IMG/VR virus record: IMGVR_UViG_3300043446_004613
Span: 124,001 to 188,000 of that record
Strand: one strand, 5' to 3'
DNA: 64,000 bases
A model generated the notes under the pieces. That model was not told the DNA's origin. It saw nothing but the letters and a program-made list of their open reading frames with translations, and searched no databases. Both the position numbers and the translations under genes were made by a program. This document shows positions 7,519-30,012 of this stretch, piece by piece. How positions within the stretch are numbered: position 1 is the first letter of the stretch; every line of letters starts with the position of its first letter.

Positions 7519-7523
7519 ATGAT

Positions 7524-8027
7524 ATGCTCTCCGCCGCTTTCATTGTAAACCGCCTGCTTGAAACCAGCGTCAATGACCATGTTCTGGTAAAAAGCAAAGG
7601 CTTGGTGCTGCTTAAAATGTCCATGATTGCGCAGTACTTGCTTGATAAGAATCGTTACCCTGATCTGCCTGAAGCTGCCGTGCAGGCTGAAATCAAAAGT
7701 GCCCGTTTGACGGCGGCTCAAGTCGACAACATTCTGGATGACGACGACGAAAAAGCGGAACGATCCGAAGCCAAAGCAGACGGTACAATCGATCAGTACT
7801 GGCAATCCAAGTGTGAAGATATTGCTGATAGCGTTGCTAACGACATTCGCAGAAGTGCCGGAATTAAAGAACCGACGTGGCAACAATGGAAGCAGGGCAA
7901 CGCTCACTATTTTAAGACTCCGTCCGGTGAAATCCTCACCGCGCAAACCGCAGAAGAGTACTGGGCAATTCAGGCCAGAATCGGAAAACAACGCGTTACT
8001 TTATGCTCTCCGCCGCTTTCATTGTAA
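7524..8027 (+). CDS. hypothetical protein
   Basis: 167 aa starting MLSAAFIVNRLLE. Confidence 0.6.
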   Translation: MLSAAFIVNRLLETSVNDHVLVKSKGLVLLKMSMIAQYLLDKNRYPDLPEAAVQAEIKSARLTAAQVDNILDDDDEKAERSEAKADGTIDQYWQSKCEDIADSVANDIRRSAGIKEPTWQQWKQGNAHYFKTPSGEILTAQTAEEYWAIQARIGKQRVTLCSPPLSL

Positions 8028-8042
8028 AGCGCCTGCTCGAAA
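7524..8042 (+). repeat. 40-bp direct repeat (7524-7563 and 8003-8042) encoding the N-termini of two adjacent genes
   Basis: atgctctccgccgctttcattgtaaa(c/g)cgcctgct(t/c)gaaa, 2 mismatches. Confidence 0.9.
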
Positions 8043-8500
8043 ACGACGATGATGACATCGGTCGCTATATCGACGCAGCAGCCCACCAGCTACGCTACGG
8101 CGCAAAGATGCTGGCAACACAACCGACATCTGCTGATCCTGTAACGTATACGCATTTTGATTGCTGGTCTGACACAGGCGACGACGAAGATGATGGCGGC
8201 GAAGTTTGGAACTGGGACAGCGATCAAGCCGTAGCTCAGGTAGGTGTGCTGTGCGACGAATGGGTGACCATACCCGGCGTTGATGCGGATAAAATTCGAC
8301 AGATACAGCGCAATTATCTAGCACTGGGTATCGAAGGGCCTGCCGACTATGGTTGTCCCGGACAGGCCGATGCGTTCAACGAGTTTGCTAAAGTTTTTAT
8401 TGAAGCTGGCTACAGTGTCTACCTAAGTGACAGCATGTTTGAAGTTTACGATCCCGAAGAATTATCGGAAGAGGACAACGTATCGGATGATGAGCTATGA
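8003..8500 (+). CDS. acidic hypothetical protein
   Basis: 165 aa starting MLSAAFIVKRLLE. Confidence 0.6.
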   Translation: MLSAAFIVKRLLENDDDDIGRYIDAAAHQLRYGAKMLATQPTSADPVTYTHFDCWSDTGDDEDDGGEVWNWDSDQAVAQVGVLCDEWVTIPGVDADKIRQIQRNYLALGIEGPADYGCPGQADAFNEFAKVFIEAGYSVYLSDSMFEVYDPEELSEEDNVSDDEL

Positions 8501-8938: not shown

Positions 8939-9157
8939 ATGAACGCTACAATTCGTAAAGTCATCGGCGAGATGCAAGAGCCGCACCCGGAAACGGATAT
9001 GTCTAACCCCGAGGAAAAGCGTGAGGTCGTGCTGGCCCGTAAGATCAAGCACTGCATTGGCGCACGTAAGGGCACCGCCGAAGATTACCGGGAAGCTCTC
9101 AAGCAGGCCGAGCGTTACGCTGACGAAATTATCACGATGCACGGACAGCAGCCTTGA
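8939..9157 (+). CDS. hypothetical protein
   Basis: 72 aa, TIRKVIGE N-terminus, GTAGTTA 4 nt upstream. Confidence 0.55.
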   Translation: MNATIRKVIGEMQEPHPETDMSNPEEKREVVLARKIKHCIGARKGTAEDYREALKQAERYADEIITMHGQQP

Positions 9158-9161
9158 TTCG

Positions 9162-9821
9162 ATGCCACAGTCCAAAGCCCATAGCGTAGTTTCGCACCTG
9201 CTTGAAGCGATGGAGGTTCGGCTGGACGGTTACGATTACCCGGTGGCTGTATACTTGATTGATCTGAAGGATAAGCAGACCGTCAAAAGCGGGTACGCTT
9301 ATTTCTCCCGGCCCTACCGTGACTGGCCGATCCCGGAGTCTTTCACGTACTTGATCGGCACAGAGAAACCTGCCCGGAAGTCCATCGCGATCCAAGCGAT
9401 TATCAACTTTGTAGACGGCCCGGCGACTGCTGCCAAGGTTACCGACGTGGACGAAGACTATAAGGCGTTTCTGCGTGACTATTACAAGCCATCGCAGCTG
9501 GACGACTACAAGTACTTTTCCAACTGTGCGCTGCAATGGGCGAAGCAGAACAAAATCATGCGTCCGGGGTACATAATGCAAGACGAACTGGACAGTTACA
9601 CGTACCCTATTCCAGAGCTACAGGCGCTTGTCAAATGGAGTTCTGACAACTGGCGCATGTCCGACCACTTTGGTTTGTTCCAAGGCAACTCTGGCGCTAC
9701 CCATGTCAGACTCACGCTCTACATCAGTGTAGACTACGCCGGTATACCGGACGAGCCGGATGCCGAAGCAGTCGAACGGTTGCTTCCTTACTTGGGGAAT
9801 GAAGGAGGGCGCAATGGCTGA
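9162..9821 (+). CDS. hypothetical protein
   Basis: in-frame ATG of ORF 9021-9821 just after the upstream stop; AHSVVSHLLE motif. Confidence 0.6.
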   Translation: MPQSKAHSVVSHLLEAMEVRLDGYDYPVAVYLIDLKDKQTVKSGYAYFSRPYRDWPIPESFTYLIGTEKPARKSIAIQAIINFVDGPATAAKVTDVDEDYKAFLRDYYKPSQLDDYKYFSNCALQWAKQNKIMRPGYIMQDELDSYTYPIPELQALVKWSSDNWRMSDHFGLFQGNSGATHVRLTLYISVDYAGIPDEPDAEAVERLLPYLGNEGGRNG

Positions 9822-10068
9822 ATTCACTCCTTGGCAGTTGACGCGCCGTCCCGAAGTAACCACACGAAAGAAAGAGGTTTTTGCGCGTGATCTCTACAAC
9901 TTTAGCGGACGCAGTGAGACGCAAGGCGCAAATAACCCGAAGGTAGGTATCCCAAGCATGGGGCCGCACGCTGCCGGGGCTATCCCGCCAACCAAGTATC
10001 CGACAGTAGTTGCCACCGAAGTTATCACCACCGGCACGCTGGGCACGGAATACGGAAACAATTTATGA
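9814..10068 (+). CDS. small hypothetical protein whose 3' end is duplicated at 11324-11404
   Basis: GGAGG SD before ATG 9814; the second copy differs only at synonymous sites, showing the frame is coding. Confidence 0.7.
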   Translation: MAEFTPWQLTRRPEVTTRKKEVFARDLYNFSGRSETQGANNPKVGIPSMGPHAAGAIPPTKYPTVVATEVITTGTLGTEYGNNL

Positions 10069-10145
10069 GTATAAGCGCACACAGGCTTGTCGACATGCTG
10101 GATAAGATTAGAGCCGATGAAGCCAGCGCCGCCTGTGATCAATAA
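10065..10145 (+). pseudogene. 5' stub of a phage gene interrupted by the rml insert
   Basis: ATGA-coupled start, MSISAHRLVDMLD motif like neighbouring phage proteins, then runs into antisense rmlB sequence and stops. Confidence 0.55.
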
Positions 10146-10151
10146 ATTCAT
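10090..10151 (-). pseudogene. rmlB: 5' fragment of dTDP-glucose 4,6-dehydratase
   Basis: MNLLITGGAGFIGSNLIQH is the RmlB Rossmann start; similarity ends after about 20 codons. Confidence 0.8.
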
Positions 10152-10166
10152 AGTGACAGTTGAAGA

Positions 10167-11114
10167 TTATTCCGGCTTCCAGTTTTTCAACGAGTGTTCG
10201 AGCGCTTCTTCTACGCTACGAACTTTGATACCTGTAGATTTCAATTTAGAAACATCCATGATGCAATTGGAGCGCGGCGTCTTAGCGGCGACTTTGTAAA
10301 ACTCATCGTCATTCGCCCAGAACTCAAATTTCCGCGCGGGCTTCAGGTGCTTTTCAATGAGTGCTACAACGTGCCGCGTGGTGACATAGCCTTCATTGGT
10401 GAGGTTGTAAACGCCGAACGGGGCGCGGCGTTCCCATAAATCCAGACAGATGCTCGCGAACTCGGCGCGGTGCGAAATGGAATTTACGTTTTCGTAAGCC
10501 TTCACATAACGCTGCACTTTGCTCAAGTAATTGCGTTTATTGTCAAATTCATCGAACGGAATCCGCAATCGCCAGACGTAGCTCTGACCAATACCTGCCA
10601 TCGCTTCCTCACCCAGCGCCTTGGTGCCGCTATAAAAACTACACGGCTGGTCGCGAAAGGAAAAATTCGGAGTATCGTTTTCGGTGAAACCGAAAATAGA
10701 GGAGGATTTCTGCTCAGCCAAAGCATGCAGGTACGACTTAGTCATATCCTTCTCCACACGCATCTTTCCGTTCTCCAAAATTTTGGCTCCGCTGTAGATG
10801 CAACCAGAAGAGACGTGTCCCCACGGAATTCCCGCCGCCGCACACGCGTGAGCGATGGTCTGGGGTAGCAGCGTATTCCCGACCAGCGTGCCAGCCTTGT
10901 CCAACTCGCAGGCATCCACATTCGGTTTTCCGGTGTAACCCGCGCAGTTAGCCACAAACTCTGGCTTTTTGGCTCGCAAAAATTCCAGCAATAAATCAAA
11001 GCGGGAATAATCCACCTGACTACGCGAAAGGGTGATGAACTCTTTTTTACGACGGCGTAATTCCGTAACGAATGCTTCGCCGATATAGCCAGTGGCTCCG
11101 AGAAGTAGAATCAT
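10167..11114 (-). CDS. rmlD: NAD(P)-dependent nucleotide-sugar epimerase/reductase (RmlD family, NRS/ER-like)
   Basis: GATGYIG, CAGYTGKPNVDACE, HVSSGCIY and FYSGTK (YxxxK) motifs; lies between rmlA and rmlB fragments. Confidence 0.85.
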   Translation of the reverse strand: MILLLGATGYIGEAFVTELRRRKKEFITLSRSQVDYSRFDLLLEFLRAKKPEFVANCAGYTGKPNVDACELDKAGTLVGNTLLPQTIAHACAAAGIPWGHVSSGCIYSGAKILENGKMRVEKDMTKSYLHALAEQKSSSIFGFTENDTPNFSFRDQPCSFYSGTKALGEEAMAGIGQSYVWRLRIPFDEFDNKRNYLSKVQRYVKAYENVNSISHRAEFASICLDLWERRAPFGVYNLTNEGYVTTRHVVALIEKHLKPARKFEFWANDDEFYKVAAKTPRSNCIMDVSKLKSTGIKVRSVEEALEHSLKNWKPE

Positions 11115-11120
11115 TTTTTT

Positions 11121-11322
11121 TTATTGCAGACGTTTGGCTTCGGCGATGACCTCTGTTTCCAGATAAGCGCGATATTCGCAATTTGGCATCAGGCTTACGA
11201 TTTTTTTCTAACTGAGTCAGCGTAACGATACCCGAGCGGAACGCTGCTTCTTCGGGACAGCCAATCTTGATGCCCGCGCGTTTTTCAATCGTCTGCACAT
11301 ACGCGCTCGCATCATGCAGGCT
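11121..11322 (-). pseudogene. rmlA: 3' fragment of glucose-1-phosphate thymidylyltransferase with a +1 frameshift
   Basis: SLHDASAYVQTIEKRAGIKIGCPEEAAF matches the RmlA C-terminus; removing one A from the 7-nt run near 11201-11207 restores LEKIVSLMPNCEYRAYLE...KRLQ*. Confidence 0.85.
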
Positions 11323-11449
11323 ACCGCCAACCAAATACCCAACAGTGGTCGCTACGGAAGTAATCACCACCGGCACGCTGGGAACCGAATACGGAAATAA
11401 TTTAAGATGAACTGCACATGCCTCAACCTTGGTGTGTAGTTATAGTGCT

Positions 11450-11680
11450 ATGAACGTAAACTATAATCCAAACGCTCGCTACGACATGGGTGCTAATGCC
11501 GCAGGCTGTGACCGTGTGTCGAATCAAAGCACACTGAACTCAGGCAGCGCCAAAGGGCTGGCCAGTGACAATGCACTATCCAGCGCGAACTTGCGTGCTG
11601 GTTTTAGTGCTGCTGGTAATCAGCGCACCAACAGCGGCCCCAACGTGGCCGGTGCTCCGCGCAGTATCAACGGCACCTAG
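11450..11680 (+). CDS. small Asn/Gly/Ala/Ser-rich hypothetical protein
   Basis: ATG 7 nt after GTAGTTA, biased codons. Confidence 0.5.
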   Translation: MNVNYNPNARYDMGANAAGCDRVSNQSTLNSGSAKGLASDNALSSANLRAGFSAAGNQRTNSGPNVAGAPRSINGT

Positions 11681-11877
11681 GTGTCGCTCAGCAGTCTTTT
11701 CTTGATGCGGTCGCAACGAGAACGTAGCCCGTCCATTACGTCGGGCCACTTCTCGTCTTCCGCTACTTCTGCGGTCAGATCGAAGCGCACGTTCTCGAAG
11801 TTACCGGTGTTCACTGTCAGCCCGTAGCTGACGCGGACAACTTTACCGGGAATTTTCTTTTTGGGCTGCGCTTCCAT
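11677..11877 (-). CDS. hypothetical protein
   Basis: 66 aa from ATG 11877; VSYGLTVNTGNFENVRFD resembles small phage proteins. Confidence 0.5.
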   Translation of the reverse strand: MEAQPKKKIPGKVVRVSYGLTVNTGNFENVRFDLTAEVAEDEKWPDVMDGLRSRCDRIKKRLLSDT

Positions 11878-11881
11878 ACAC

Positions 11882-12565
11882 TTAACGATGGCACCAAACA
11901 CTTTTACCTAGTAAGCGTACGTGAGGACTGTGTAAAAGACGGCAATAGCAGGCAGTACGTGTTATCTTATCGCCAGTTTTTTCAGTCCACGCTGTTAGTA
12001 CTTCTTTAGTACTGATACGTGGCTTTACGCTAATAGTTGCGAGCACAAAGTCATCAAAAGCAGCCGTACTGGCTGTCTTCCAATGCCTGCGCTGTTTAGT
12101 CACAAGTGCCGACTTATCATCCGCACTAGCTGGTTTAAGGCCGTTAATCGCACGAGTATACTCATCAATTTGGCTAGTGAGTTCTGCGATTTCGTTTATT
12201 AGCTTAGCCTTGGTAACATTGATTGATTCCAACTGCGCATTTTTGCGTTTAAGCGTAGATTCCGCTGTTGTGATACGTATCGAAAGTTCATCTTTAAGTG
12301 ACATAGCTTTTTGAATTTGCGCCGAAGGTTTAGTTAAAAACACGTGGGCGCTTTGAAGAATAGTGGACTTGGAGATGGTATCAGCCGTAAAGCCGCTATC
12401 CGCCAAGCTTTCGGTTAAATTGACGATGTCAGAAGAAACGTCTACAGTCGTGCGATCTGGCCGCAGTATTCCGACTAGAACCTGCGAAAGCTTTTGACGC
12501 AATGACGGGTCTTTTTCAACCACATCGCGCACCTTGATGTAAAATCTGAAGGATACTCTTTGCAT
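11882..12565 (-). CDS. hypothetical protein with coiled coil and possible C-terminal winged HTH
   Basis: C-terminal 227 aa of ORF 11882-12748; AT-rich; the upstream part overlaps the DUF932 gene and is ignored. Confidence 0.55.
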   Translation of the reverse strand: MQRVSFRFYIKVRDVVEKDPSLRQKLSQVLVGILRPDRTTVDVSSDIVNLTESLADSGFTADTISKSTILQSAHVFLTKPSAQIQKAMSLKDELSIRITTAESTLKRKNAQLESINVTKAKLINEIAELTSQIDEYTRAINGLKPASADDKSALVTKQRRHWKTASTAAFDDFVLATISVKPRISTKEVLTAWTEKTGDKITRTACYCRLLHSPHVRLLGKSVWCHR

Positions 12566-12576
12566 AAGATTTAGAT

Positions 12577-12602
12577 AGGGGCTGACCCGAAGGCCAGCCC
12601 CT
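12577..12602 (-). terminator. stable hairpin (terminator or mRNA stabiliser) after the DUF932 gene
   Basis: aggggctggcc-TTCG-ggtcagcccct on the minus strand, C(UUCG)G loop, weak U tract. Confidence 0.55.
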
Positions 12603-12608
12603 GTGATT

Positions 12609-13733
12609 TTAGTTGCGCAAAAAGTCCGATGGCGGCAGTTCCATGATCTTTCCACCCAAGCGTTCAATGTCCACAGCGCGGTCGTAGCTGGGCACATCTT
12701 CTGCCAAACGGGTAACTGCGTTGACCAAGCCGTACTGGCTGAAGTCACCGCCCTGTGCGAAATGCAGGAGCATGTTGGCTTTTTCCTGTTCGATCAGGTC
12801 AAAACGATCGGCAACGGCTTCCACGACCTTGCTCACGTCCGTGGCGTCTTTAGCCAGTTGAACGTTCTGCAACTTGCGCAGCCGTTCGATGTTTTCGTTG
12901 AACTTGATCTGATCGAGTGCGCCGGAAACAACGTCACTAACTTTGGCCCAGAAAGCTTTGTCATCGAGCTTGCGTGTTTCGTCGCTGAACAGTTCAGAGG
13001 TGTTTTCGTCGCCCCAGATTTCACCCTCGTTACGGCGACCGACATGGTGACGCTTGAGGGTACGCTGCAAGATAAGGCCGTTGGTGCAGACCAAATCGTG
13101 CATGATCGGATCGACAAAAATTGAACCGTTGCCTGTTTCAGAATTACCGATGATGACCCCGGCTTCGACGGTGCGCTGGATACGGTTGTGGGTGCCGATC
13201 TTCACATTCTGGTCGATGATGGCTTGGATGCGTGGGGTTGAAGCTTGGATATAGAAACGCTTCTCAGTGATCTCAGCGCTGCGGATAATGCAGCCTGCTT
13301 CCTTGAGCTTGGGCATGACAGCAGCGAAAAGGTCGAAGTTGTCGAGAATACGGTAACGGTCGCTCAGGAAGGCGCGAGCGATCTTGTGGCCGTTGCAGAG
13401 GGTGCGCAACATCCGGCGTTCCGGCTTGGAGGCGAACCAGTGGTTTACGTTGCGGCAGAGAAGCTCAGGAGCTTCGGTGCGCATGCGTTCGGCATACTTT
13501 GCCGGAATACCGACGCGGGCGGCGATTTGCTCAAGGCACTGTACAGTGGGCTTGAACACTTGTTGTTGCTGATTGACGGTAAACTGAAGGCCCACATCGG
13601 GGGTACCTTCGGACTCTGGTGGTTCGACTACCGTCATGCTCAGGGCACTGGTGTCAGCGACGAAATCCCGTTTGGTACGGTTCTCCTCAAGGATTTGCTG
13701 GCTGAGGTCTTGCAGTGAACGTCCTGCTTTCAT
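12609..13733 (-). CDS. DUF932 family protein
   Basis: RAFLSDRYRILDN, NSETGNGS and LVCTNGLI motifs typical of DUF932. Confidence 0.75.
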   Translation of the reverse strand: MKAGRSLQDLSQQILEENRTKRDFVADTSALSMTVVEPPESEGTPDVGLQFTVNQQQQVFKPTVQCLEQIAARVGIPAKYAERMRTEAPELLCRNVNHWFASKPERRMLRTLCNGHKIARAFLSDRYRILDNFDLFAAVMPKLKEAGCIIRSAEITEKRFYIQASTPRIQAIIDQNVKIGTHNRIQRTVEAGVIIGNSETGNGSIFVDPIMHDLVCTNGLILQRTLKRHHVGRRNEGEIWGDENTSELFSDETRKLDDKAFWAKVSDVVSGALDQIKFNENIERLRKLQNVQLAKDATDVSKVVEAVADRFDLIEQEKANMLLHFAQGGDFSQYGLVNAVTRLAEDVPSYDRAVDIERLGGKIMELPPSDFLRN

Positions 13734-19886: not shown

Positions 19887-20663
19887 ATGATACTCGCGCA
19901 CGCTATTGTTGACGTACTGCTCGAAGCCAGCCAACCGTCGGCTGGTGACGCAAAAGGTGTCTATGTTTTTGGTCGAGGATTACCGGCAAGTGGTTATCCA
20001 GCGCCCACCTTTGAAAAGCTTATTGAGCAATTTCGCGAATACGGTTTCATCGACGCAAACGTAAAAGACAGCGCTAATTTGATGAGCCAGCTGGTAAAGA
20101 CCGGGTACACTTTTATATTTAAGCGCAGCCAGAACGACATTGAAGTGATTGGACGTATTCCAGTTGAAACGTCTGCTGCGAAATACGTAGAGCAGTATCT
20201 CGGAATGGAAGATAAAACAGTCGTTCAGTATCGGCGCGATGTGTTTGCTACGCCTACAAAGATGAGCGCTGAAAAGATTTTCTCCAAAGAGGAATCTCAA
20301 GGGATGAAGCCCCTCAACAGTTCAACGCGGATTGGCATCGGCTACGAGACGGCAAAAGAAGGCATCAAAATCGTCGAAGTCCATCAGAACGGCCCAGCAG
20401 CGCAAGCTGGTCTTAAAGCGGGGATGATTCTGACTTACGCTTGGATTGATTTTGGTCAAGGTCATGGTTCTGACTGGTACAAGCTAACCTCTGAGGAAAG
20501 CCTTGCAGTAGTGCTAAGCGCAGCCCAGCCCGGAAAACCGTTGATGCTCAAAATTCTTGTTGGAGGTACCTACCAAAATTTTCCGGTAATCCCTGTCGCA
20601 AACCAGCAGGGAGGCCCACAGAAACCGCCAGCAGCCGGTTCAACCTCCGGTTCTAAACCTTGA
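19887..20663 (+). CDS. PDZ-domain protein, candidate internal head protein
   Basis: RIGIGY...IKIVEVHQNGPAAQAGLKAGMIL is a PDZ signature; N-terminal AHAIVDVLLE. Confidence 0.65.
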   Translation: MILAHAIVDVLLEASQPSAGDAKGVYVFGRGLPASGYPAPTFEKLIEQFREYGFIDANVKDSANLMSQLVKTGYTFIFKRSQNDIEVIGRIPVETSAAKYVEQYLGMEDKTVVQYRRDVFATPTKMSAEKIFSKEESQGMKPLNSSTRIGIGYETAKEGIKIVEVHQNGPAAQAGLKAGMILTYAWIDFGQGHGSDWYKLTSEESLAVVLSAAQPGKPLMLKILVGGTYQNFPVIPVANQQGGPQKPPAAGSTSGSKP

Positions 20664-20664
20664 T

Positions 20665-22095
20665 ATGCCTCTTTGGCTCGAAGAACGCCTGACGTTTGAT
20701 AAACTGTTTCGGATCAGCGATCCGAAGCGGGTCTATCGTTCTTTTACCGTACGCGGGCCGCCACTGGAGATCGACTCCTATCAGGATGTCGTCTATTACA
20801 TCTTCAATTTCAAGTCCAGCCCAAGCACAACCGGATTACGGCATCGCGGGTACGTCAAGTTTTTCAAACCGAAAAACAAGAGTCCCAAAAGCGTGCCGCT
20901 CCAGCATTTGGATTGCTTGGTTGATTGCACGTGTCCCGACTTCCGTTATCGCTGGGCATGGGCAAACAAGCAGCGCCAAAGCAGCGTTGTCGGCCCGAAC
21001 TCGCTTAATCAGGCGTGGAATAAAGCGCCGCGTAAAACGAATCCATCCGGTAAGCCGGGTCTGTGCAAGCACATCTTGGCGGCGCGGCAGTACATCTACG
21101 GTTTGATGTCCGCGTTCCCCGGTGATGAACCAGATACGGCATATAAGCTTGACCGTCTGACCAAATACGCGACCAAACGCTGGACTGATTTTGAAGGTCA
21201 GATGCAAGCAGCCAAGGAGCGTGAAAAAGAAATTCGCCGTCGGCGCGAACAGCGTAATCTTGGCCAGCTGCCACTGACACCACCACCGTTACCTGCTGCC
21301 TCAAAGGCTCCAGCGTCTACACCTGTACGGCCAGTGTCTACAGAACCGAGTGTCGATGCTGTGAAGTCAGCACCGCAGGCGCAAAAGCCCAAGGCGACCA
21401 CGGCGTTCAAAAGCGCATCACCGGAACCTTTGCCTACCGATGTTACCGCTAAAAAGCCTGCTACACCGCAGCAAAAACAAGTTTCCGTTAAACCAGCACT
21501 GACACCGACATCGAAGCCGAAACGTGTGATCGGAAACCGTATCGTGCAGCCGTATAATCCTAGTGACAAGTACTGGATCAAACCAGAGGAGGCACTGCTG
21601 TGTGTGCCGATACGCGATATTATTTTGGAGAGTGTAGTTAGTGCGAACGGTAAAAGTATGAGCAACATCAAAGAAGCCATCAAACTCGTCGAGGAACTGG
21701 AAGCTGACGAAATTCAGCTTGGTGACGAAATGCCTGCAACTGACATGGGCTTGGGTAGCGACATCGGCGGTGAAACGCTGGAACCGAGCGAACCTGCCGT
21801 CAGTGACAGCGCTATCGGTGCCGATACGGAAGGCGACACGGCGCTTAGCCTCCTCCGCTCCATCAAAACCTCTCTTGAACAGATTGCCGCCGCAGTCGCT
21901 CCTGTCGACGCTCTCCCTGCCCCCGGTGAAGCCGGTGAAGGCGTGGAAGGTGCCGAAGAAGCTCCGATGCCCGGCATGCCTCCCGCTGATCTCGGTGCCG
22001 AAGCCGCTGCCGAGGGTGAAACCCCGGAAGAGGAAGAAGCCGAGCACGAAGACGACGAAGCCGAAGCTGAAGCTGAAGGCGAAGAAAAAGAGTAA
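20665..22095 (+). CDS. SWIM zinc-finger protein with Pro/Lys linker and acidic tail
   Basis: VDCTCPDF...LCKHIL (CxC...CxH); possible internal start at 21658. Confidence 0.65.
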   Translation: MPLWLEERLTFDKLFRISDPKRVYRSFTVRGPPLEIDSYQDVVYYIFNFKSSPSTTGLRHRGYVKFFKPKNKSPKSVPLQHLDCLVDCTCPDFRYRWAWANKQRQSSVVGPNSLNQAWNKAPRKTNPSGKPGLCKHILAARQYIYGLMSAFPGDEPDTAYKLDRLTKYATKRWTDFEGQMQAAKEREKEIRRRREQRNLGQLPLTPPPLPAASKAPASTPVRPVSTEPSVDAVKSAPQAQKPKATTAFKSASPEPLPTDVTAKKPATPQQKQVSVKPALTPTSKPKRVIGNRIVQPYNPSDKYWIKPEEALLCVPIRDIILESVVSANGKSMSNIKEAIKLVEELEADEIQLGDEMPATDMGLGSDIGGETLEPSEPAVSDSAIGADTEGDTALSLLRSIKTSLEQIAAAVAPVDALPAPGEAGEGVEGAEEAPMPGMPPADLGAEAAAEGETPEEEEAEHEDDEAEAEAEGEEKE

Positions 22096-22113
22096 CCATT
22101 TACATTCGACACT

Positions 22114-22572
22114 ATGAACCCCGGTGAATATACAAGCCCGCTTGTTCGCAAGACGCTGGTTCAGTGTCCTGTTGTTTCCGGTTACGTGACTTCGCGCCTG
22201 TACACGCAGGACGATTATCCGCCGACCATTTCCGGCGGTACGACTGCGACGAACATGCTCGTGACGTTTGAGAACGTGGGTAACACCCAGTTCGCCGTTT
22301 ACTTGCGCGAAACCAACGACCGGAGCATCAGCGGCATCCGCTACAACCTGACCGATAATCCGGTCAATCTGGTACCCGGCGGTCAGCAGACCAAAATGCT
22401 CAGTGGCACCCGCAGCTTCCTTGAAGTGTATTGCTCTGGAACTACGGCTGGCCAGCTGCGTATGCAGATCGACTCGCAACGTCGTTGGAGTGAACTTGGG
22501 TTTGCGAAGGATGATCCGTTCTATCCGCCGCAGCTGTGGCAAGCCACGGTTCTTCCCGGCCCGATCACTTAA
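22114..22572 (+). CDS. putative virion beta-sandwich protein (paralog of 33345 and 50680 genes)
   Basis: shared hhhxNxGxN motif; biased codons. Confidence 0.55.
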   Translation: MNPGEYTSPLVRKTLVQCPVVSGYVTSRLYTQDDYPPTISGGTTATNMLVTFENVGNTQFAVYLRETNDRSISGIRYNLTDNPVNLVPGGQQTKMLSGTRSFLEVYCSGTTAGQLRMQIDSQRRWSELGFAKDDPFYPPQLWQATVLPGPIT

Positions 22573-23892
22573 TCAAACCGGTTTTCCGGTACTTGCGTCC
22601 GCCACGATCGCATAGGTTGTGGCGGACGACTGTTTTCCGGCACCGCGTGTGCGTTCTGAGGATTGGACTTCAGGGATGCTTGGGAAGTAACCCGGCGCTT
22701 GGCTTTCAGGAACTAGCTGGTTTTGCGCGTTCTGTACGGTAAGACTTTGATCCTGACCGCGAAATTCTCCGCGCTGCAATGTATACACCGAGTGAACAGA
22801 CTGCTTTCTTACGATGTGTAGCGCTTCTGTTACAAGGTAGTATCCGCTGTGGCTGCTGGCACGATCGGACTGCTGCGTCATCGATACGTTCAGCAAATCA
22901 CCGTGCCGAATAGTGATTGTCTTCTCAAGCTCGACAGTACAGACGAAAGTTTGCTGGCGTGCCCGCTGATACTGATACTGGGCGATTGCAGCAGCTTCGG
23001 CGGCCCCGTTATCGGACAGGTGGTAGGACATGGTGTACTGCCCATTCGGCACACTGCTGTACTGATAGATGTTATCTGAAAGCTTGAGTGCTTTTTCAGG
23101 CAAACTGGACACCTCTTTGGTTTCACCTGTCTTGGGATCGTACTGAATGATGCGCAATCCGGCGAGGCCTGTATCCCAAAGAACAGGTTCCTGACTCCGA
23201 TCGACTACGTTCAAGCTCGTGCCGTAAACGCTGTAGTAGTCCATCAAACGCACCGTAGATTGGTAGTCTGGCGTATGAAAATGCAGCACGTTATCGCGGA
23301 TGAAGAAGTAGTACCCTCCGTGCCCGACTGTGTTGACTGCACGCGGTAAAAGGCGCTCGATAACAAAACGCGTATCATCGATGAAAGTCTGGTAGTAGAT
23401 GAAGTCCCCGCTCGTTTCTTCCACCACGCAATCGAGCTTGTTTTCAGCGGCGATCGCTTTGACGATGTCACTGATCTTGCCTTTGCGGGCTACTACTTTA
23501 TTAGAGCGCTCAATTCGTAACAGGTCATTTGCAGTCTTGAATACGATCGTATGGCCAGACGTGTTAGCTATACCTTCAAATTTGCTGCTGTAGCATACGA
23601 TGATGTGTTGTTGCCAAGGCAGCCAGTACATTTTGGTGGGTGTGCCGAAACCAAGGCGAAATTCCAGCACCGGGTCTGCATCAGCCATAACCTGCTTTAC
23701 GCTCTCAACAAAAGCCGGGTCGTTCGTCGTAAAAGTGTGTGTACAAAAGCCCGTAGACATCATGCTTTCGCGCAATTCGGCTTGGTAAAGGGTAACAACG
23801 TTCGGATTGAACACGAGCGTCTTGTTGTCCTTCAAAACCAGCTTATACTGTAGCTGAGCTTGACCTTCTAGGGCTTGAACGGTTTCAGGCAT
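22573..23892 (-). CDS. baseplate hub protein (gp27/GPD-like)
   Basis: ISDIVKAIA, DTRFVIERL, YYFFIRDNVLHF and GYYLVTEALH pattern of hub/late-control D proteins. Confidence 0.72.
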   Translation of the reverse strand: MPETVQALEGQAQLQYKLVLKDNKTLVFNPNVVTLYQAELRESMMSTGFCTHTFTTNDPAFVESVKQVMADADPVLEFRLGFGTPTKMYWLPWQQHIIVCYSSKFEGIANTSGHTIVFKTANDLLRIERSNKVVARKGKISDIVKAIAAENKLDCVVEETSGDFIYYQTFIDDTRFVIERLLPRAVNTVGHGGYYFFIRDNVLHFHTPDYQSTVRLMDYYSVYGTSLNVVDRSQEPVLWDTGLAGLRIIQYDPKTGETKEVSSLPEKALKLSDNIYQYSSVPNGQYTMSYHLSDNGAAEAAAIAQYQYQRARQQTFVCTVELEKTITIRHGDLLNVSMTQQSDRASSHSGYYLVTEALHIVRKQSVHSVYTLQRGEFRGQDQSLTVQNAQNQLVPESQAPGYFPSIPEVQSSERTRGAGKQSSATTYAIVADASTGKPV

Positions 23893-23903
23893 AATGTATA
23901 CAG

Positions 23904-24212
23904 TCAGCCCTCATCCACAGCCACAAAACTGCGTTCAAGCAGTTCGAGAACATGGCTGGATAGGCCGACATCGTACAACGCGATTGACGCATCGTCGATT
24001 TCGATTGCGTCGATCATGCGCTCAACGGTGTTACTGTTGGCAAAAATCATGGAACATTCGGAAGCGCTCAGTTCGATGCCATCTTCTGCGACTGCCGCTT
24101 CATCGTTTGGATAAATCACGGCTTTTGACGTTTTAACCACGTCAACGTCGCTCTGGATGTGCTCAGAGCTAAGGTCTTCCAACAACTGTACAAGTGCGTT
24201 TGGTTTTTTCAT
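23904..24212 (-). CDS. hypothetical protein
   Basis: starts MKKPNALVQLLE. Confidence 0.5.
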   Translation of the reverse strand: MKKPNALVQLLEDLSSEHIQSDVDVVKTSKAVIYPNDEAAVAEDGIELSASECSMIFANSNTVERMIDAIEIDDASIALYDVGLSSHVLELLERSFVAVDEG

Positions 24213-24232
24213 TCTGCTAGAATAGTTACGGT

Positions 24233-24787
24233 GTGACATTCAACGAGCGCAAAGAGTGGCAATACGACATGGCTCAGTACGGTCTGGCTGATACCCAAAC
24301 CGCGCTGAAGATACACGCGGAGTACATCAACAAGATGTCTCCCCGGCCATATCCCAAATTCTATGAGATCGACCGCCGCTCTGAGCGCTACGATGACCTT
24401 TGGCACGTACCGTTGGACGATAGAACCAAGTTTAGCCGGGTTATTGATGAACTTCCGGTCATCGTTCAAGCGGAGCGCCCGGACTGGCGTTTGACACGTG
24501 TCGGTATCGTACCGCAGCAAAAATACAAGGTCTGGATGTCCAATCTCGGCCTACAGGCTGCGAACTACTTTCCAACCCGTGGTGACATCATGTACTACAA
24601 TGGTTATCGGAACATGATCATCAATGTGGTGATTGAGCCGACATCCATGTGGATGCAGACCAATGTCTGGCTGGGCCTGCTGGTCGAAACAACCATTCCG
24701 GCGGACGGCGATGCGCGTCCGTTGGTCAGCCCGAACGAACCAGCGCCGTCAGAACGTATACAAACACGCCCGCTGCCTGAAGCATGA
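24233..24787 (+). CDS. putative neck/head-closure protein
   Basis: 184-aa beta-rich protein with PTRGDIMYYNG motif, upstream of the tail terminator and sheath. Confidence 0.45.
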   Translation: MTFNERKEWQYDMAQYGLADTQTALKIHAEYINKMSPRPYPKFYEIDRRSERYDDLWHVPLDDRTKFSRVIDELPVIVQAERPDWRLTRVGIVPQQKYKVWMSNLGLQAANYFPTRGDIMYYNGYRNMIINVVIEPTSMWMQTNVWLGLLVETTIPADGDARPLVSPNEPAPSERIQTRPLPEA

Positions 24788-25131
24788 TAATGGACGCGCT
24801 AAAGCGGACTATCGACCAGTCGATTAAGACACGACTGGCGAACCCAGCGCAACGTAAACAGGTTGTAGACACCGTGCTGGCAGGATTTGAGCATCTGCGT
24901 AAAAATCCAGTGCCCGATTTGCCCGAGCGCACGCAAAAACTACGCCAGCGCGTTGAAAAGCTGGCGCAGGAAGTAGCGGTAGAGTTTTCCGGTGATAAGC
25001 TCGTAGTTAAGGTGGCCGGGGCGTCAGAGTCGTTGTTGGTAGAGCTTAGACGCGGCACAAACTGGTATGCGCCGTGGGAAGAGATTGACGTGATTGTTCT
25101 GGCTGCGATATTAAAAGACCCAAGCAAGTAG
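24784..25131 (+). CDS. hypothetical (possible head-tail) protein
   Basis: 115 aa, ATGA coupled, ELRRGT motif. Confidence 0.5.
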   Translation: MIMDALKRTIDQSIKTRLANPAQRKQVVDTVLAGFEHLRKNPVPDLPERTQKLRQRVEKLAQEVAVEFSGDKLVVKVAGASESLLVELRRGTNWYAPWEEIDVIVLAAILKDPSK

Positions 25132-25140
25132 TTAAGTCAA

Positions 25141-25404
25141 ATGAAAGACCTCAAAAAGATCATTTCGGAATCCGTCGTGAACGGCGGCAAGAACTATGTG
25201 AGCGAAGCCGTGAACCAGATTCTCGGCGAAGACGTCTCTAGCGGCCAAACGGTCGCAGTTGTTGACGATCCGATCAGCGGTATGACCGGTGCCAAAGGCA
25301 AGGTCAAATCCATCAGCGACTCCAATCCCGGATTCGCGGACGTGGAGCTTGAAAACGGCACCACGGTGAAGATGCAGACTTCGCTGCTCGTTCCCGTCAA
25401 GTAA
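25141..25404 (+). CDS. small SH3/KOW-like protein, probably abundant
   Basis: GQTVAVV...GAKGKVKSI...ADVEL pattern; own upstream motif and terminator; biased codons. Confidence 0.55.
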   Translation: MKDLKKIISESVVNGGKNYVSEAVNQILGEDVSSGQTVAVVDDPISGMTGAKGKVKSISDSNPGFADVELENGTTVKMQTSLLVPVK

Positions 25405-25422
25405 CACCGTGAGTTATTTTGC

Positions 25423-25468
25423 CAGCGAGCACGGCGGCTAAAAAGGCTGCCGTGCTCGCTGTTTCTTT
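25423..25468 (+). terminator. Rho-independent terminator
   Basis: 16-bp stem cagcgagcacggcggc / gctgccgtgctcgctg followed by tttcttt. Confidence 0.8.
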
Positions 25469-25488
25469 ACAGACCCGTAATTAAGTGT

Positions 25489-26562
25489 GTGAACGTACCG
25501 AATTGGAAAGGTAACACGCTGAACACGCAGGCCGGTGCCTTGGCTGGCACCAGTATGCGTTATCATGAACTGGCGCTCCAACAGTGGCTGAACACAGTGT
25601 TCAAACTGCGCTGGGGCGTGCCGGTGCCTGTTGTATTCTCTACACCGATGGACGCGTTCAGCGCGTTCAACAAGCTCTGGGCCGAAAACGACAACGTGTT
25701 CAAATACCTGTTGGACGTAAAAGACGAGGAAGGCCGACCGGTGTATCAGCCGTATCCACAGCCGGTGCGCTACCCGATCATAAGTGTATACAGAAAAGGC
25801 TGGAAGCTGCGTCAGTCGCATAACTTCTCGATTCACCGGATGCGCTACATCAACTGGCCCACGGTCAGCAGCACCGGCTCAAGTGTATACGGGCGACCCG
25901 ATCAAGGTGATAACCTTACCCAGTGCAACATGGGTCACGTGACAACGAGCCGTTTTCCGATGGCTTTCGATTACCGTTTCCAGATCGATCATTTTTGTAA
26001 CCGCCCGGATACGCAGGCATTTTATATTTCGCAGCTGTTCCGCGAATTTTGGCGTACAGGAGGCCCGACGATGCAGACATGGATCGTCGTGAATTATCCC
26101 GGTTTAGGCTCAAAGCTTGTTCGACTTTATGTCGACGGTGAAATCCAGAACATGACGCCGGAAGAACCGGAAGATGGCAAGAGCGTTGAATTTCGCACCA
26201 GTTTCACCGTCGTGCTGGAAGGTTACGATATTGACCTCGATTATCAGATTTATCCGACGCTATGGAAACTGGTGCTGCGCAGCGGAAGCGTTGATCCGGC
26301 GGCACTGACTGACGCGTTTAACGCACTAACCATAGACATGCGCGAACAGCCGGATAATAGCGTCGTAAACTATCGCAGCAAGATGGGTGCGATGCCACCT
26401 GAAGGCGATTGCCCGCAAAAACTGCGTGACGCTCGCTTGGAGCGCGAGCAGGTACAGGTTACCGTGCTTGAAGCATTACAGGTTACAACGCAAGGGCCTT
26501 CCGGTTATCCGCCAGCAGCCGGAGTTACCGCTTTCGGTACTGCTTCACTAGCTTCAGTGTAA
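25489..26562 (+). CDS. tail terminator/completion protein (gp15-like)
   Basis: position before the sheath; PMAFDYRFQID and FRTSFTVVLEG segments resemble gp15-type folds. Confidence 0.55.
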   Translation: MNVPNWKGNTLNTQAGALAGTSMRYHELALQQWLNTVFKLRWGVPVPVVFSTPMDAFSAFNKLWAENDNVFKYLLDVKDEEGRPVYQPYPQPVRYPIISVYRKGWKLRQSHNFSIHRMRYINWPTVSSTGSSVYGRPDQGDNLTQCNMGHVTTSRFPMAFDYRFQIDHFCNRPDTQAFYISQLFREFWRTGGPTMQTWIVVNYPGLGSKLVRLYVDGEIQNMTPEEPEDGKSVEFRTSFTVVLEGYDIDLDYQIYPTLWKLVLRSGSVDPAALTDAFNALTIDMREQPDNSVVNYRSKMGAMPPEGDCPQKLRDARLEREQVQVTVLEALQVTTQGPSGYPPAAGVTAFGTASLASV

Positions 26563-26670
26563 ACACCCGCGAGTACGTGGCGTTGCGTTAAGTGCGCTGA
26601 ATGATACTGGTAGTTAAAAGTGTGAGCGCGGTTTTAATAGATTAGCGCGTAGTTAAGACAGCAAAAGATT

Positions 26671-28968: not shown

Positions 28969-28972
28969 TCTT

Positions 28973-29614: not shown

Positions 29615-30012
29615 AAATTGACGTATACAGCGAAGCGGTACTTCGGGTGCTCCCCGAAGTACCTGATCTCCCTCTGGAGGCACCGCCTGCGGAGGGCTTC
29701 GATCTTGTCGATGTCTGCATCTGTCCGGCCTGCGGCGGCCAAGACGCCGCTGTGAAGAAAGTGGAGGATGCGGAAGTTGCTAAATGCCCACAGTGCCAGT
29801 GTGAATTCTCGCCACGCTTGGAAGCTGTATCGGCGCAAGTCATTCGCCGTATTGGTGAGCACCGTGCCCGGCGCATGAGCCGCTTCCTTGAGTCATTGCC
29901 GTTGAATCCACCGCCGGGTGTAAATCCAAAAGATTACTCACTTTTCCGTAAAATCGTCGATACTGAGCCTTTGGCTGTTGAAAACCCTGAATCCGAACTT
30001 GAAAATGAATAA
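29611..30012 (+). CDS. zinc-ribbon protein
   Basis: CPACG...CPQCQ pairs. Confidence 0.55.
   Translation: MKIDVYSEAVLRVLPEVPDLPLEAPPAEGFDLVDVCICPACGGQDAAVKKVEDAEVAKCPQCQCEFSPRLEAVSAQVIRRIGEHRARRMSRFLESLPLNPPPGVNPKDYSLFRKIVDTEPLAVENPESELENE

What the first reader, a model, noticed from the sequence alone, without database searches (positions are those of the whole stretch)
10065..11322. Host rml operon fragment apparently caught in the act of capture
A 1.2-kb antisense segment reads rmlA 3' end, intact epimerase/reductase, rmlB first 20 codons, with operon-like spacing (6 and 15 nt). It interrupts a phage gene stub. Bases 10085-10103 read plausibly both as the phage motif LVDMLD and, antisense, as RmlB IQHVDK, which suggests a microhomology junction. 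The rmlA remnant carries a frameshift while the central gene is intact. There is no integrase or IS nearby. This would be a snapshot of how an auxiliary gene is acquired, and it should identify the host; Verrucomicrobiota is my unverified guess.
Basis: partly seen in the sequence, partly recalled or inferred. Interest (0 to 1): 0.8.

Follow-up and report, generated by a model that had tools for sequence, protein, structure and literature searches.

The report
Host rhamnose-operon fragment captured by phage
A 211-kb T4-like freshwater phage carries, backwards between two head-module genes, a 1.23-kb piece of a Verrucomicrobiota rhamnose operon with one intact enzyme gene and stumps of both neighbours. 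It is an ordinary kind of host-gene capture, but both junctions can still be read unusually clearly.

Summary
On the minus strand, window 10092-11322 is a piece of a Limisphaerales (Verrucomicrobiota) rmlA / epimerase-reductase / rmlB operon. It holds the last 66 rmlA codons with a +1 frameshift, an intact 315-aa NRS/ER-type gene, the first 20 rmlB codons, and the native 6- and 15-nt spacers. It lies in the head module of a T4-like phage, between genes X and Y, which are adjacent in 11 of 14 related loci.

Homology stops at 11322 in all 29 aligned host genomes and at 10092 in all 18 shown. The stumps are almost undecayed, so the capture is young. However, the best sampled donor is only 80% identical in DNA, and the structure has even depth in two runs of one sample.

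Three findings are new:
- An 84-nt repeat of X's 3' end flanks the insert. All 11 in-frame differences are synonymous, so the copies come from two already diverged X genes.
- The 27 nt left of the insert are the start of a lost phage gene.
- An unrelated phage (L082) captured the same gene independently.

The mechanism is known; this example is unusually legible.

The parts
9814..10068 (+). Phage gene X. It is complete at 84 aa and belongs to a small conserved head-module protein family of unknown function.
   Evidence: It has 35 homologues at 54-67% identity in large gp23-bearing phage contigs, and it aligns over its full length with them. An RBS-like GAAGGAGG lies upstream.
9985..10068 (+). 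Left copy of the 84-nt direct repeat, which is the last 27 codons plus stop of X.
10065..10091 (+). 5' stub of a lost phage gene Z. Its ATG overlaps the X stop (ttATGa) and it reads MSISAHRLV. This is the first half of an N-terminal motif shared by several head-module genes of this phage.
   Evidence: The motif [ILVF][IV]xx[LM]L[ED] sits at the N-termini of the genes starting at 7524, 8003, 8599, 9162 and 19887. Relative L170 has a 182-aa gene after X with the same ATGA overlap and the N-terminus MTASTLVDYLLE. The 23-mer has no other copy in the window or in any fetched locus apart from the three that are the source contig itself.
10092..10103 (.). Left junction zone. These 12 nt (GACATGCTGGAT) read DMLD on the + strand, completing the Z motif, and IQHV of RmlB on the - strand.
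   Evidence: Host homology reaches 10092 in all 18 host loci shown. The exact crossover point within the zone cannot be fixed.
10092..10151 (-). First 20 codons of host rmlB (dTDP-glucose 4,6-dehydratase): MNLLITGGAGFIGSNLIQHV.
   Evidence: It is identical in protein to the start of L001's 345-aa ORF. That ORF matches TIGR01181 at 472 bits against a cutoff of 365. Pfam gives a weak Epimerase hit on the 20-mer.
10152..10166 (-). Native 15-nt operon spacer between the epimerase/reductase gene and rmlB.
   Evidence: Host L002 has a 9-nt spacer at the same place.
10167..11114 (-). Intact 315-aa NRS/ER-type gene, the predicted bifunctional 4-keto-6-deoxyglucose 3,5-epimerase/4-reductase. It is the only complete gene of the insert.
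   Evidence: Pfam RmlD_sub_bind, E = 1.4e-26. PDB 4QQR '3,5-epimerase/4-reductase', E = 5.6e-29, and 7JID UDP-L-rhamnose synthase. It scores below the RmlD equivalog cutoff. GATGYIG, GCIY and YSGTK are present. It is 94% aa identical to L001 and sister to it in the tree. It keeps 165 of 170 host-conserved columns, and all 5 deviations are shared with L001.
11115..11120 (-). Native 6-nt A-rich spacer between the rmlA stop and the start of the epimerase/reductase gene.
11121..11322 (-). 3' stump of host rmlA (66 codons plus stop), with a +1 frameshift in the A-run (T7 at 11201-11207 on the + strand).
   Evidence: Aligned with 14 host rmlA tails. 43 of 44 host-conserved residues are kept, and pN/pS is 0.14-0.20 against a host-host median of 0.22. 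Homology ends at 11322 in 29 hosts.
11323..11323 (.). One base (A) at the right junction that belongs to neither partner.
11324..11410 (+). Right copy of the X 3' end: 27 codons, then AGA, then the TGA stop. It is a stub with no X 5' part. It sits at the ancestral distance (45 nt) from gene Y.
11450..11680 (+). Phage gene Y (76 aa), the usual immediate downstream neighbour of X.
   Evidence: tblastn finds Y 51-67 nt after X in 8 of 9 related loci.

Best explanation
A 1.23-kb fragment of a Limisphaerales (Verrucomicrobiota) chromosome was joined into the head-gene module of a T4-like jumbo phage by illegitimate (non-homologous or microhomology) recombination. No integrase or transposase was involved.

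The fragment spans the end of rmlA, the whole NRS/ER-type epimerase/reductase gene and the start of rmlB. It lies in reverse orientation at a variable spot between phage genes X and Y.

The left joint lies within the first 10-13 codons of a phage gene (Z). There the DNA encoding a recurrent N-terminal motif matches antisense rmlB over up to about 9-12 nt. The right joint is essentially blunt, inside a second copy of X's 3' end.

The two X copies had already diverged as working genes. The locus therefore combines DNA from the host with two diverged X genes. The most likely source is two related phages, one with X-Z order and one with X-Y order. A plausible route is template switching or join-copy recombination during mixed infection.

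The capture is evolutionarily young. If the one intact gene is expressed, it would carry out the last two steps of dTDP-L-rhamnose (or UDP-L-rhamnose) synthesis from the product of the host's RmlB.

Shown: host origin, donor clade, breakpoints, absence from relatives, youth of the stumps, coding-type divergence of the repeat, and the Z stub.
Inferred: the recombination route, the order of events, and expression and benefit of the enzyme.
For: - Phage context: gp23, gp21-like protease, gp20 portal and tail sheath are present. The source is a 211-kb IMG/VR contig.
- Host origin and breakpoints.
- Host operon order: rmlA, then the 315-aa gene, then rmlB, in bacterial contigs beside clpB.
- Phylogeny: the phage copy is sister to Limisphaerales MAG L001 (100/99), nested in Verrucomicrobiota, with a terminal branch of 0.048, which is not long.
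- Relatives without the insert and with the same synteny: X to Y is 51-67 nt in 8 of 9 loci. Gene calls show the same in L173/L174, L177/L178 and L179.
- The spot is variable: L170 has a 1037-nt different insert and L175/L176 have a 120-aa gene.
- Youth: the rmlA stump keeps 43 of 44 conserved residues with a host-like pN/pS. The central gene has no phage-specific change at 170 conserved columns.
- Repeat: 11 of 22 synonymous sites and 0 of 59 non-synonymous sites differ. None of 200,000 random draws gave an all-synonymous pattern.
- Z stub and motif.
- No mobile-element genes or terminal inverted repeats.
- Assembly: one 87-kb Logan contig spans 8200-14000 with 0 differences. In a second run, contigs cross both joints with 0 differences at 16-17x.
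- Recurrent capture: L082, a RecT/methylase phage contig, has a lone homologue (65% aa) with a decayed rmlA tail. It branches elsewhere in the tree.
Against: - No donor closer than 80% nt identity was found. The crossover points and the length of any microhomology therefore rest on homology limits, not on the true parental sequences.
- No close relative of the phage exists in the collections searched; the best X is 67% aa identical. Neither the intact Z, nor the second X lineage, nor the age of the insert within this lineage can be checked directly.
- Both runs that hold the structure come from one sample, probably the source of the contig.
- There is no evidence of expression. No sigma-70-like promoter and no T4 late-promoter motif was found, and the gene is antisense to X and Y.
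- The intact ORF could reflect youth rather than selection.
Confidence: 0.8

Rival explanations
1. Neutral passenger. The fragment is recently acquired junk. The epimerase/reductase gene is intact only because there has been too little time to break it, and it is not expressed or useful to the phage.
For: - The stumps are almost undecayed, so elapsed time is short.
- Zero phage-specific changes at conserved sites fits recency as well as it fits selection.
- No promoter-like site was found, and the orientation is antisense to the flanking operon.
- A lone last-step enzyme without RmlA/RmlB is an odd auxiliary gene. Of 79 other viral loci with a homologue, 55 carry full rmlA and rmlB nearby.
Against: - The one certain indel lies in the roughly 270 nt of stumps and none in the 948-nt ORF. 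At the stump rate, about 3.5 would be expected in the ORF (P about 0.03, my estimate).
- An unrelated phage (L082) independently kept just this gene while its rmlA tail decayed.
- The gene points the same way as the neighbouring minus-strand gene cluster (13733-11677), so read-through could express it (inference).
Confidence: 0.35
2. Single-genome event. The ancestor carried two diverged copies of X (X1 - Z - ... - X2 - Y). One replacement with host DNA then removed everything from Z codon 10 or so to X2 codon 56. No second phage was involved.
For: - It needs only two illegitimate joints in one molecule.
- It explains the coding-type divergence of the repeat and the Z stub.
- L170 shows that partial paralogue pairs exist at this spot: Y' and Y flank extra genes.
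Against: - None of the related loci inspected has two X copies.
- Two paralogues with 27 of 27 identical residues but pS of 0.5 in one genome would be exposed to deletion or gene conversion.
Confidence: 0.25
3. Old, vertically inherited auxiliary cassette that is conserved in this phage lineage, not a recent event.
For: - The nearest donor is only 80% nt identical with saturated dS.
- GC3 of the gene (0.585) equals the phage mean (0.60).
- No close relatives are available to show absence within the lineage.
Against: - The non-functional rmlA stump keeps 43 of 44 conserved residues with a host-like pN/pS. This bounds neutral decay at roughly 5% or less (the bound is my Poisson estimate).
- Several hosts also have GC3 of 0.57-0.60, so composition is uninformative.
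- The relatives that could be inspected all lack it.
Confidence: 0.1
4. Assembly chimera of phage and bacterial reads, or of two phage strains.
For: - It is a metagenomic contig.
- In run X2 the inner part of the insert (10666-11114) is broken into short contigs of lower word depth.
- The two X copies look like two strains.
Against: - Two assemblers and two runs give the same joints with 0 differences, at depths of 23.7x and 16-17x matching the flanks.
- The longest exact run shared by the two repeat copies is 20 nt, read from the alignment. That is below a 31-mer word size, so the copies cannot collapse in such a graph.
- Neither joint shows any long stretch shared between phage and host DNA.
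- The breaks in X2 lie inside the gene, not at the joints.
Confidence: 0.04

Closest known systems
Host-derived auxiliary metabolic genes in hyperplastic regions of T4-like phages (for example cyanomyoviruses). Illegitimate 'genetic additions/replacements' are described for T4-related genomes in PMC2993671.
   Same: A host metabolic gene sits in a variable spot of a T4-like genome and is absent from relatives. No mobile-element genes are present. The proposed mechanism is illegitimate recombination in the replicating phage DNA pool.
   Different: Here both flanking host genes survive as stumps with their native spacers, so direction, donor clade and breakpoints are readable. The site is inside the head-gene module. 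A diverged duplicate of the phage target and the stub of a third phage gene are preserved at the joints.
Morons of lambdoid phages (my knowledge of the concept)
   Same: An extra gene lies between two genes that are adjacent in relatives, and its orientation is independent of the flanking operon.
   Different: A moron is defined by having its own promoter and terminator. None was detectable here. The insert carries broken neighbours rather than a tidy transcription unit.
NRS/ER of Arabidopsis (PDB 4QQR) and Mimivirus L780 / UGER (PDB 7JID), which are bifunctional nucleotide-rhamnose 3,5-epimerase/4-reductases
   Same: It is a single RmlD-like domain. The best solved-structure match is 4QQR (E = 5.6e-29). 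The GxxGxxG, GCI[FY] and YxxxK motifs align. The bifunctional activity of these enzymes is stated in PMC9741107.
   Different: It is bacterial, and it lies between rmlA (a dTDP-type thymidylyltransferase) and rmlB, so the substrate is probably dTDP-linked rather than UDP-linked. It has an insertion of about 25 residues (roughly positions 110-140) relative to 4QQR. Activity is untested.
Replacement 3' ends carried by integrating elements (tRNA- or gene-end-targeting islands and prophages; my knowledge)
   Same: A diverged duplicate of the 3' end of the target gene flanks the inserted DNA, and the gene stays intact.
   Different: There is no integrase and no identical core. The duplicate lies on the far side of host DNA that is itself a random operon fragment.
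Shuffling of internal-protein genes in T-even phages through short conserved flanking sequences (my recollection; not checked in a paper here)
   Same: Neighbouring head-module genes share near-identical 5' ends that encode an N-terminal targeting-like motif (7523-7577 and 8002-8056, 85% identical). The left joint of the insert lies in such a motif.
   Different: The partner here is host DNA that matches the motif only by chance on its antisense strand. Cleavage or capsid targeting by the motif is not shown.

Membership tests
Host-to-phage captured gene (auxiliary gene acquired by illegitimate recombination) | The sequence is of cellular origin by phylogeny and nested within a host clade. | tested here: met
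   It is sister to Limisphaerales MAG L001 (100/99) inside Verrucomicrobiota. 550 of the 600 genome stretches that matched a pattern encode a relative, and the top 80 are almost all labelled Verrucomicrobiota.
Host-to-phage captured gene (auxiliary gene acquired by illegitimate recombination) | It is embedded in a bona fide phage genome between phage genes. | tested here: met
   gp23, protease, portal and sheath genes are in the window. X and Y flank the insert.
Host-to-phage captured gene (auxiliary gene acquired by illegitimate recombination) | It is absent at the same locus in related phages. | tested here: met
   X to Y is 51-67 nt in 8 of 9 loci. Gene calls agree. These relatives are distant, with X 54-67% aa identical.
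Host-to-phage captured gene (auxiliary gene acquired by illegitimate recombination) | No site-specific recombinase or transposase, and no terminal inverted repeats or short perfect target duplication. | tested here: met
   No such Pfam or PHROG hit. No terminal inverted repeats. The flanking repeat is 84 nt at 86% identity.
Host-to-phage captured gene (auxiliary gene acquired by illegitimate recombination) | The gene is maintained by selection or expressed in the phage. | tested here: inconclusive
   The ORF is intact and has no phage-specific change at conserved sites, but the stumps are equally undecayed. No promoter was found. No RNA data were available.
Moron | Own promoter and terminator flanking the extra gene. 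| tested here: not met
   There are 0 sigma-70-like sites in 9500-12200, and no terminator-like site lies beyond the 3' end of the gene. The scan does not cover non-sigma-70 promoters.
NRS/ER-type bifunctional 3,5-epimerase/4-reductase | A single RmlD-like SDR domain that is closer to NRS/ER than to canonical RmlD. | tested here: met
   4QQR scores E = 5.6e-29 against RmlD structures at 2e-10 and 3e-9. TIGR01214 rmlD scores 84.9 bits against a cutoff of 224.
NRS/ER-type bifunctional 3,5-epimerase/4-reductase | Cofactor and catalytic motifs: GxxGxxG, YxxxK, and the Cys of GCI[FY]. | tested here: met
   GATGYIG at 6, GCIY at 104 and YSGTK at 161. They align with the same motifs of 4QQR. The catalytic role of the Cys is from my memory of the literature.
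NRS/ER-type bifunctional 3,5-epimerase/4-reductase | It replaces separate RmlC and RmlD in the pathway. | tested here: inconclusive
   The host operons are rmlA, this gene, then rmlB, with no rmlC adjacent. Whole host genomes were not searched for rmlC or rmlD.
NRS/ER-type bifunctional 3,5-epimerase/4-reductase | Demonstrated epimerase plus reductase activity. | not testable with these tools
   This needs an enzyme assay.
Canonical RmlD (dTDP-4-dehydrorhamnose reductase, TIGR01214 equivalog) | Score above the curated equivalog cutoff. | tested here: not met
   84.9 bits against 224.05.

The most novel reading that the evidence does not exclude
The locus could be the product of a single three-party replication accident in a mixed infection. 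A 3' end from a phage with X-Z gene order primed on a host DNA fragment, at a chance antisense match to the DNA encoding the phage's N-terminal targeting-like motif. It copied 1.23 kb of the rml operon and then switched to a second, diverged phage with X-Y order. The genome left and right of the insert would then descend from two lineages. The conserved motif-coding DNA that these phages seem to use to shuffle head-protein genes would also be a port of entry for host genes. L082's independent capture suggests that this particular enzyme is repeatedly kept by phages of Verrucomicrobiota.
Probability: 0.2. Interest if true: 0.65.

Novelty: new member of a known kind. Interest (0 to 1): 0.5.

Why it matters
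Phages are known to pick up host metabolic genes, but the joints are usually erased, so the mechanism is inferred rather than seen. Here both broken neighbours, the native operon spacers, a stub of the phage gene at one joint and a diverged duplicate of the target at the other all survive.

Several things follow. The direction of transfer and the donor order (Limisphaerales) can be assigned, which links an uncultured 211-kb freshwater phage to its host. The breakpoints can be placed to within a few bases. One can see that the event involved no recombinase, used at most about a dozen bases of chance homology, and drew on two diverged phage templates.

The locus also offers a natural test of whether a lone last-step rhamnose enzyme is useful to a phage, because an unrelated phage kept the same gene. 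The mechanism itself is the expected one, so this is a clean example rather than a new principle.

Tried and rejected
- GenBank phage search: blastn of 9000-12800 found no match.
- Close relatives of the phage: none in IMG/VR with the DUF932 neighbour or a degenerate X C-terminus pattern, which returned only the source contig. None in JGI metagenomes with X (best 67%). The two-lineage idea could therefore not be tested directly.
- A closer donor: P0001 and P0006 have no retrievable DNA. L172 is 76.5% nt identical.
GC3 is 0.585 in the insert, 0.60 on average in phage genes and 0.52-0.91 in hosts.
- dS dating: saturated, with pS of 0.68 even to L001.
- Reading 10079-10091 as further rmlB with a 3-nt deletion, resembling L031/L037: dropped. 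The Z-stub reading is better because the nearest host L001 does not match, while the ATG/stop overlap and the AHxLV motif do.
- Origin of the 23-nt 'filler' elsewhere: no other copy. A degenerate search for Z's N-terminus in IMG/VR returned only the source contig.
- Microhomology at the right joint: GGCTA is shared only if a 2-nt gap is allowed, so I treat it as chance.
- Promoters: no sigma-70-like site and no TATAAATA.
- Second run search, to decide whether the identical 151-nt piece in X3/X4 is phage or donor: X3/X4 hold under 5% of words of 20000-29999. This is suggestive of a donor but inconclusive at depth 2.
- tRNA or att-type explanation: there are no tRNAs in the window.
Full report
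**Context.** The window is part of IMG/VR contig IMGVR_UViG_3300043446_004613 (211,113 bp). It encodes a gp23-type major capsid protein, a gp21-type prohead protease, a gp20-type portal and a tail sheath. It is therefore a T4-like jumbo myovirus. The finding lies in the head-gene module, a few kb downstream of the capsid gene. There are no tRNAs in the window and no similar sequence among GenBank phages.

**The observation.** On the minus strand the sequence reads, from 11322 down, as follows:
- 66 codons and the stop of rmlA, with the stop at 11123-11121;
- a 6-nt A-rich spacer;
- an intact 315-aa ORF (11114-10167);
- a 15-nt spacer;
- MNLLITGGAGFIGSNLIQHV, the first 20 codons of rmlB (10151-10092).

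A scan of one genome per species returned 550 relatives of the 315-aa protein, the best 80 almost all from Verrucomicrobiota MAGs. In these genomes the order is rmlA, the 315-aa gene, then rmlB with short spacers. In longer contigs the set sits beside clpB and a subtilisin gene. blastn of the window against these loci gives alignments of 70-80% identity that begin at 11322 and end at 10092 or 10096. Aligning the junctions shows that similarity to the hosts stops abruptly at 11322 in 29 of 29 loci. It stops at 10092 in all 18 shown. The rmlA stump has one extra base in an A-run compared with 14 hosts. Two runs and two assemblers reproduce the run length.

**What the intact gene is.** Pfam places it in RmlD_sub_bind. 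It scores far below NCBI's cutoff for true RmlD, at 84.9 against 224 bits. Its best solved relative is Arabidopsis NRS/ER (4QQR, E = 5.6e-29), followed by the Mimivirus UDP-L-rhamnose synthase 7JID. Bacterial RmlD structures score only about 1e-9 to 1e-10. NRS/ER and L780 are single-domain enzymes that perform both the 3,5-epimerisation and the 4-reduction (PMC9741107). The Rossmann motif, GCIY and YSGTK are present. A three-gene operon without rmlC fits that reading, but activity and the absence of rmlC elsewhere in the hosts are untested.

**Donor.** In a maximum-likelihood tree of 56 host proteins, the window protein and 8 viral homologues, the window protein is sister to that of Limisphaerales MAG L001 (support 100/99). 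The pair lies inside a clade of Verrucomicrobiota subdivision 3 / Limisphaerales, and its branch is not long (0.048). The donor itself is not sampled. L001 is 94% identical in protein but 80% in DNA, with synonymous sites saturated (pS 0.68). Other candidates are no closer.

**Age.** The stumps cannot function, so they record time since capture.
- The rmlA stump keeps 43 of 44 residues that are at least 90% conserved among 30 hosts, and the one change is V to I.
- Its pN/pS against hosts (0.14-0.20) equals the host-host value (0.22).
- Nearly all of its divergence from sampled hosts therefore arose while it was still a working bacterial gene.
- One change at roughly 100 visible non-synonymous sites bounds neutral decay at about 5% or less (my Poisson estimate).
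- The central gene has no phage-specific change at 170 conserved columns.

The capture is therefore young in evolutionary terms. It is not demonstrably in progress, though. The structure has even depth (23.7x, and 16-17x in the second run), and no contig lacks the insert in two runs of one sample. Contigs hide rare variants, and both runs are probably the source sample.

**Relatives.** Gene X (9814-10068, 84 aa) has 35 homologues in large gp23-bearing phage contigs. In 8 of 9 related loci, X is followed after 51-67 nt by gene Y. Gene calls in five more places, L173/L174, L177/L178 and L179, show the same. The wider gene order (protease, gp23..., X, Y, a DUF932 gene, a 780-aa protein, an SbcC-like gene) matches the window. 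The insert is therefore not an old feature of the family. These relatives are distant, however; no close relative exists in IMG/VR or the JGI metagenomes. The spot is variable. L170 has 1037 nt of other genes between X and Y, and L175/L176 have a 120-aa gene there.

**New point 1: the flanking repeat.** The insert is bracketed by an 84-nt direct repeat, 9985-10068 and 11324-11407. It is one of only four direct repeats of 30 nt or more in the window.
- The left copy is the true end of X.
- The right copy is a stub that sits 45 nt before Y, the ancestral distance.
- The copies encode the same 27 residues and differ at 11 positions, all third-codon and synonymous: 11 of 22 synonymous sites and 0 of 59 non-synonymous sites.
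- None of 200,000 random sets of 11 changes was all-synonymous.
- A stub drifting in place would collect mostly non-synonymous changes, and pS of 0.5 far exceeds the decay of the rmlA stump.

The two copies therefore diverged as working genes before they were brought together. Either two related phages contributed, or the ancestor had two X paralogues.

**New point 2: the left joint.** The 23 nt between the X stop and the host DNA are not filler.
- An ATG overlaps the X stop (ttATGa), and the frame reads MSISAHRLV, then DMLD.
- The pattern [ILVF][IV]xx[LM]L[ED] sits at the N-termini of the genes starting at 7524, 8003, 8599, 9162 and 19887. Examples are MILAHAIVDVLLE and MPQSKAHSVVSHLLE.
- In L170 the gene that follows X has the same ATGA overlap and starts MTASTLVDYLLE.
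- So 10065-10091 is the start of a lost phage gene, Z.
- The next 12 nt, GACATGCTGGAT, complete the motif on the plus strand and encode IQHV of RmlB on the minus strand.

The exact crossover and the true length of the match (3 to about 12 nt) cannot be known without an intact Z.

The right joint shows no convincing microhomology. One base (11323) is unassigned, and GGCTA is shared only if a 2-nt gap is allowed.

**Mechanism.** No integrase, transposase or homing nuclease was found in the ORFs tested between 6891 and 17908. There are no terminal inverted repeats and no perfect short target duplication. Illegitimate recombination in the replicating DNA pool, as discussed for T4-related phages (PMC2993671), is the simplest route. 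The layout is: complete X plus a Z stub, then host DNA, then an X stub plus Y. I see two routes that fit:
- (a) two template switches or joints involving a phage with X-Z order, a host fragment and a diverged phage with X-Y order;
- (b) a single replacement in a genome that had X-Z-...-X-Y.

I favour (a), because no inspected relative has two X copies. The data do not decide between them.

**Assembly.** A chimera is unlikely.
- An 87-kb Logan contig spans 8200-14000 with no difference. In the second run, contigs cross each joint with no difference at the depth of the flanks.
- The repeat copies share at most 20 consecutive bases, read from the alignment.
- The contig breaks seen in that run lie inside the gene, not at the joints. 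That region also attracts short contigs that match only in part and probably come from host homologues.

**Function in the phage.** This is the weakest part. The ORF is intact while the stumps hold the only certain indel. That mildly favours selection (P about 0.03 by my estimate). An unrelated RecT/methylase phage contig, L082, carries a lone homologue (65% aa). It branches elsewhere in the tree, and just upstream it has a much more decayed rmlA tail (...PNCEYRDYL...AEAKRL), with no rmlA or rmlB within 6 kb. That is an independent capture in which the same gene was kept.

Against this, no promoter was found, and the gene is antisense to X and Y. It is, however, co-oriented with the minus-strand cluster 13733-11677, from which read-through is conceivable (inference). 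In addition, 55 of 79 other viral loci with a homologue carry the full rmlA and rmlB as well. If expressed, the enzyme would convert the RmlB product to nucleotide-L-rhamnose during infection. What the phage would gain from that is unknown.

**Verdict.** This is a real, young, host-to-phage capture of a Limisphaerales rml operon fragment by illegitimate recombination at a variable spot in the head module. 'In the act' is relative, and the locus history involves a second X gene and a lost gene Z. The kind of event is known. The value lies in how completely the joints are preserved.

Noticed in passing
window 7524, 8003, 8599, 9162, 19887 (N-termini); 7492 and 14271 (C-termini): A motif [ILVF][IV]xx[LM]L[ED] recurs near the N-terminus of at least five plus-strand genes around the head module, for example MLSAAFIVNRLLE, MPQSKAHSVVSHLLE and MILAHAIVDVLLE. 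It also occurs at the C-terminus of two others. It resembles, from memory, the capsid-targeting and prohead-protease cleavage signals of T4 internal proteins. This was not tested.
   Followed up: partly
window 7523-7577 and 8002-8056: Two neighbouring genes (167 and 165 aa) share a 55-nt 5' end at 85% identity, with the first 8 residues identical, while the rest differs. This suggests gene shuffling or conversion through the motif-coding DNA.
   Followed up: partly
L082:5732-7158 (IMGVR_UViG_3300010885_034387): An unrelated phage-like contig (RecT, DNA methyltransferase) carries a lone NRS/ER-type gene (65% aa). A decayed rmlA C-terminal remnant lies just upstream, and the gene's stop codon is lost, so the ORF runs on to 390 aa. 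This is an independent capture of the same host gene.
   Followed up: partly
L170:185-1210; L175:3255-3617: The X|Y boundary holds different extra genes in other relatives. L170 has a 182-aa gene with the same N-terminal motif, a 74-aa Y-like paralogue and one more ORF. L175/L176 have a 120-aa gene whose GTG overlaps the X stop. The boundary looks like a hot spot for insertions.
   Followed up: partly
window 10082-10087 and 11317-11322: The hexamer CAGGCT occurs at or next to both ends of the host fragment. On the left it lies in the Z stub just outside host homology, and on the right it is the last six host bases. It may be chance. No model I tried explains it.
   Followed up: no
window 10797-10947 (runs X3/X4): Freshwater metagenomes from other studies hold a 151-nt contig that is 100% identical to part of the captured gene at depth 2. 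They hold under 5% of the sampled words of a 10-kb stretch of the phage (20000-29999). This may be the true donor lineage.
   Followed up: partly
window 10528-11109 (run X2): In the second run of the source sample, the inner part of the captured gene is split into short contigs with about half the word depth of the flanks (about 8 against 16). This may come from graph branching with host homologues in the same sample, or from variation in the insert.
   Followed up: no
window 62439-62590 and 30108-30640: There is a 76-nt tandem duplication (93% identical) at 62439-62590. There is also a 125-nt repeat (82% identical, 408 nt apart) inside the ORF 29978-30781.
   Followed up: no
window 11677-11680: Gene Y (+) and the 74-aa minus-strand gene converge and overlap by 4 nt. 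This leaves no room for a terminator between the two transcription units.
   Followed up: no
relatives' contig qTEj4tR0: A 124.7-kb related phage contig carries LAGLIDADG and Hint (intein or homing-endonuclease) domains and a Mom-like gene near its gp23 and X genes. None of these is seen near the insert in the window.
   Followed up: no
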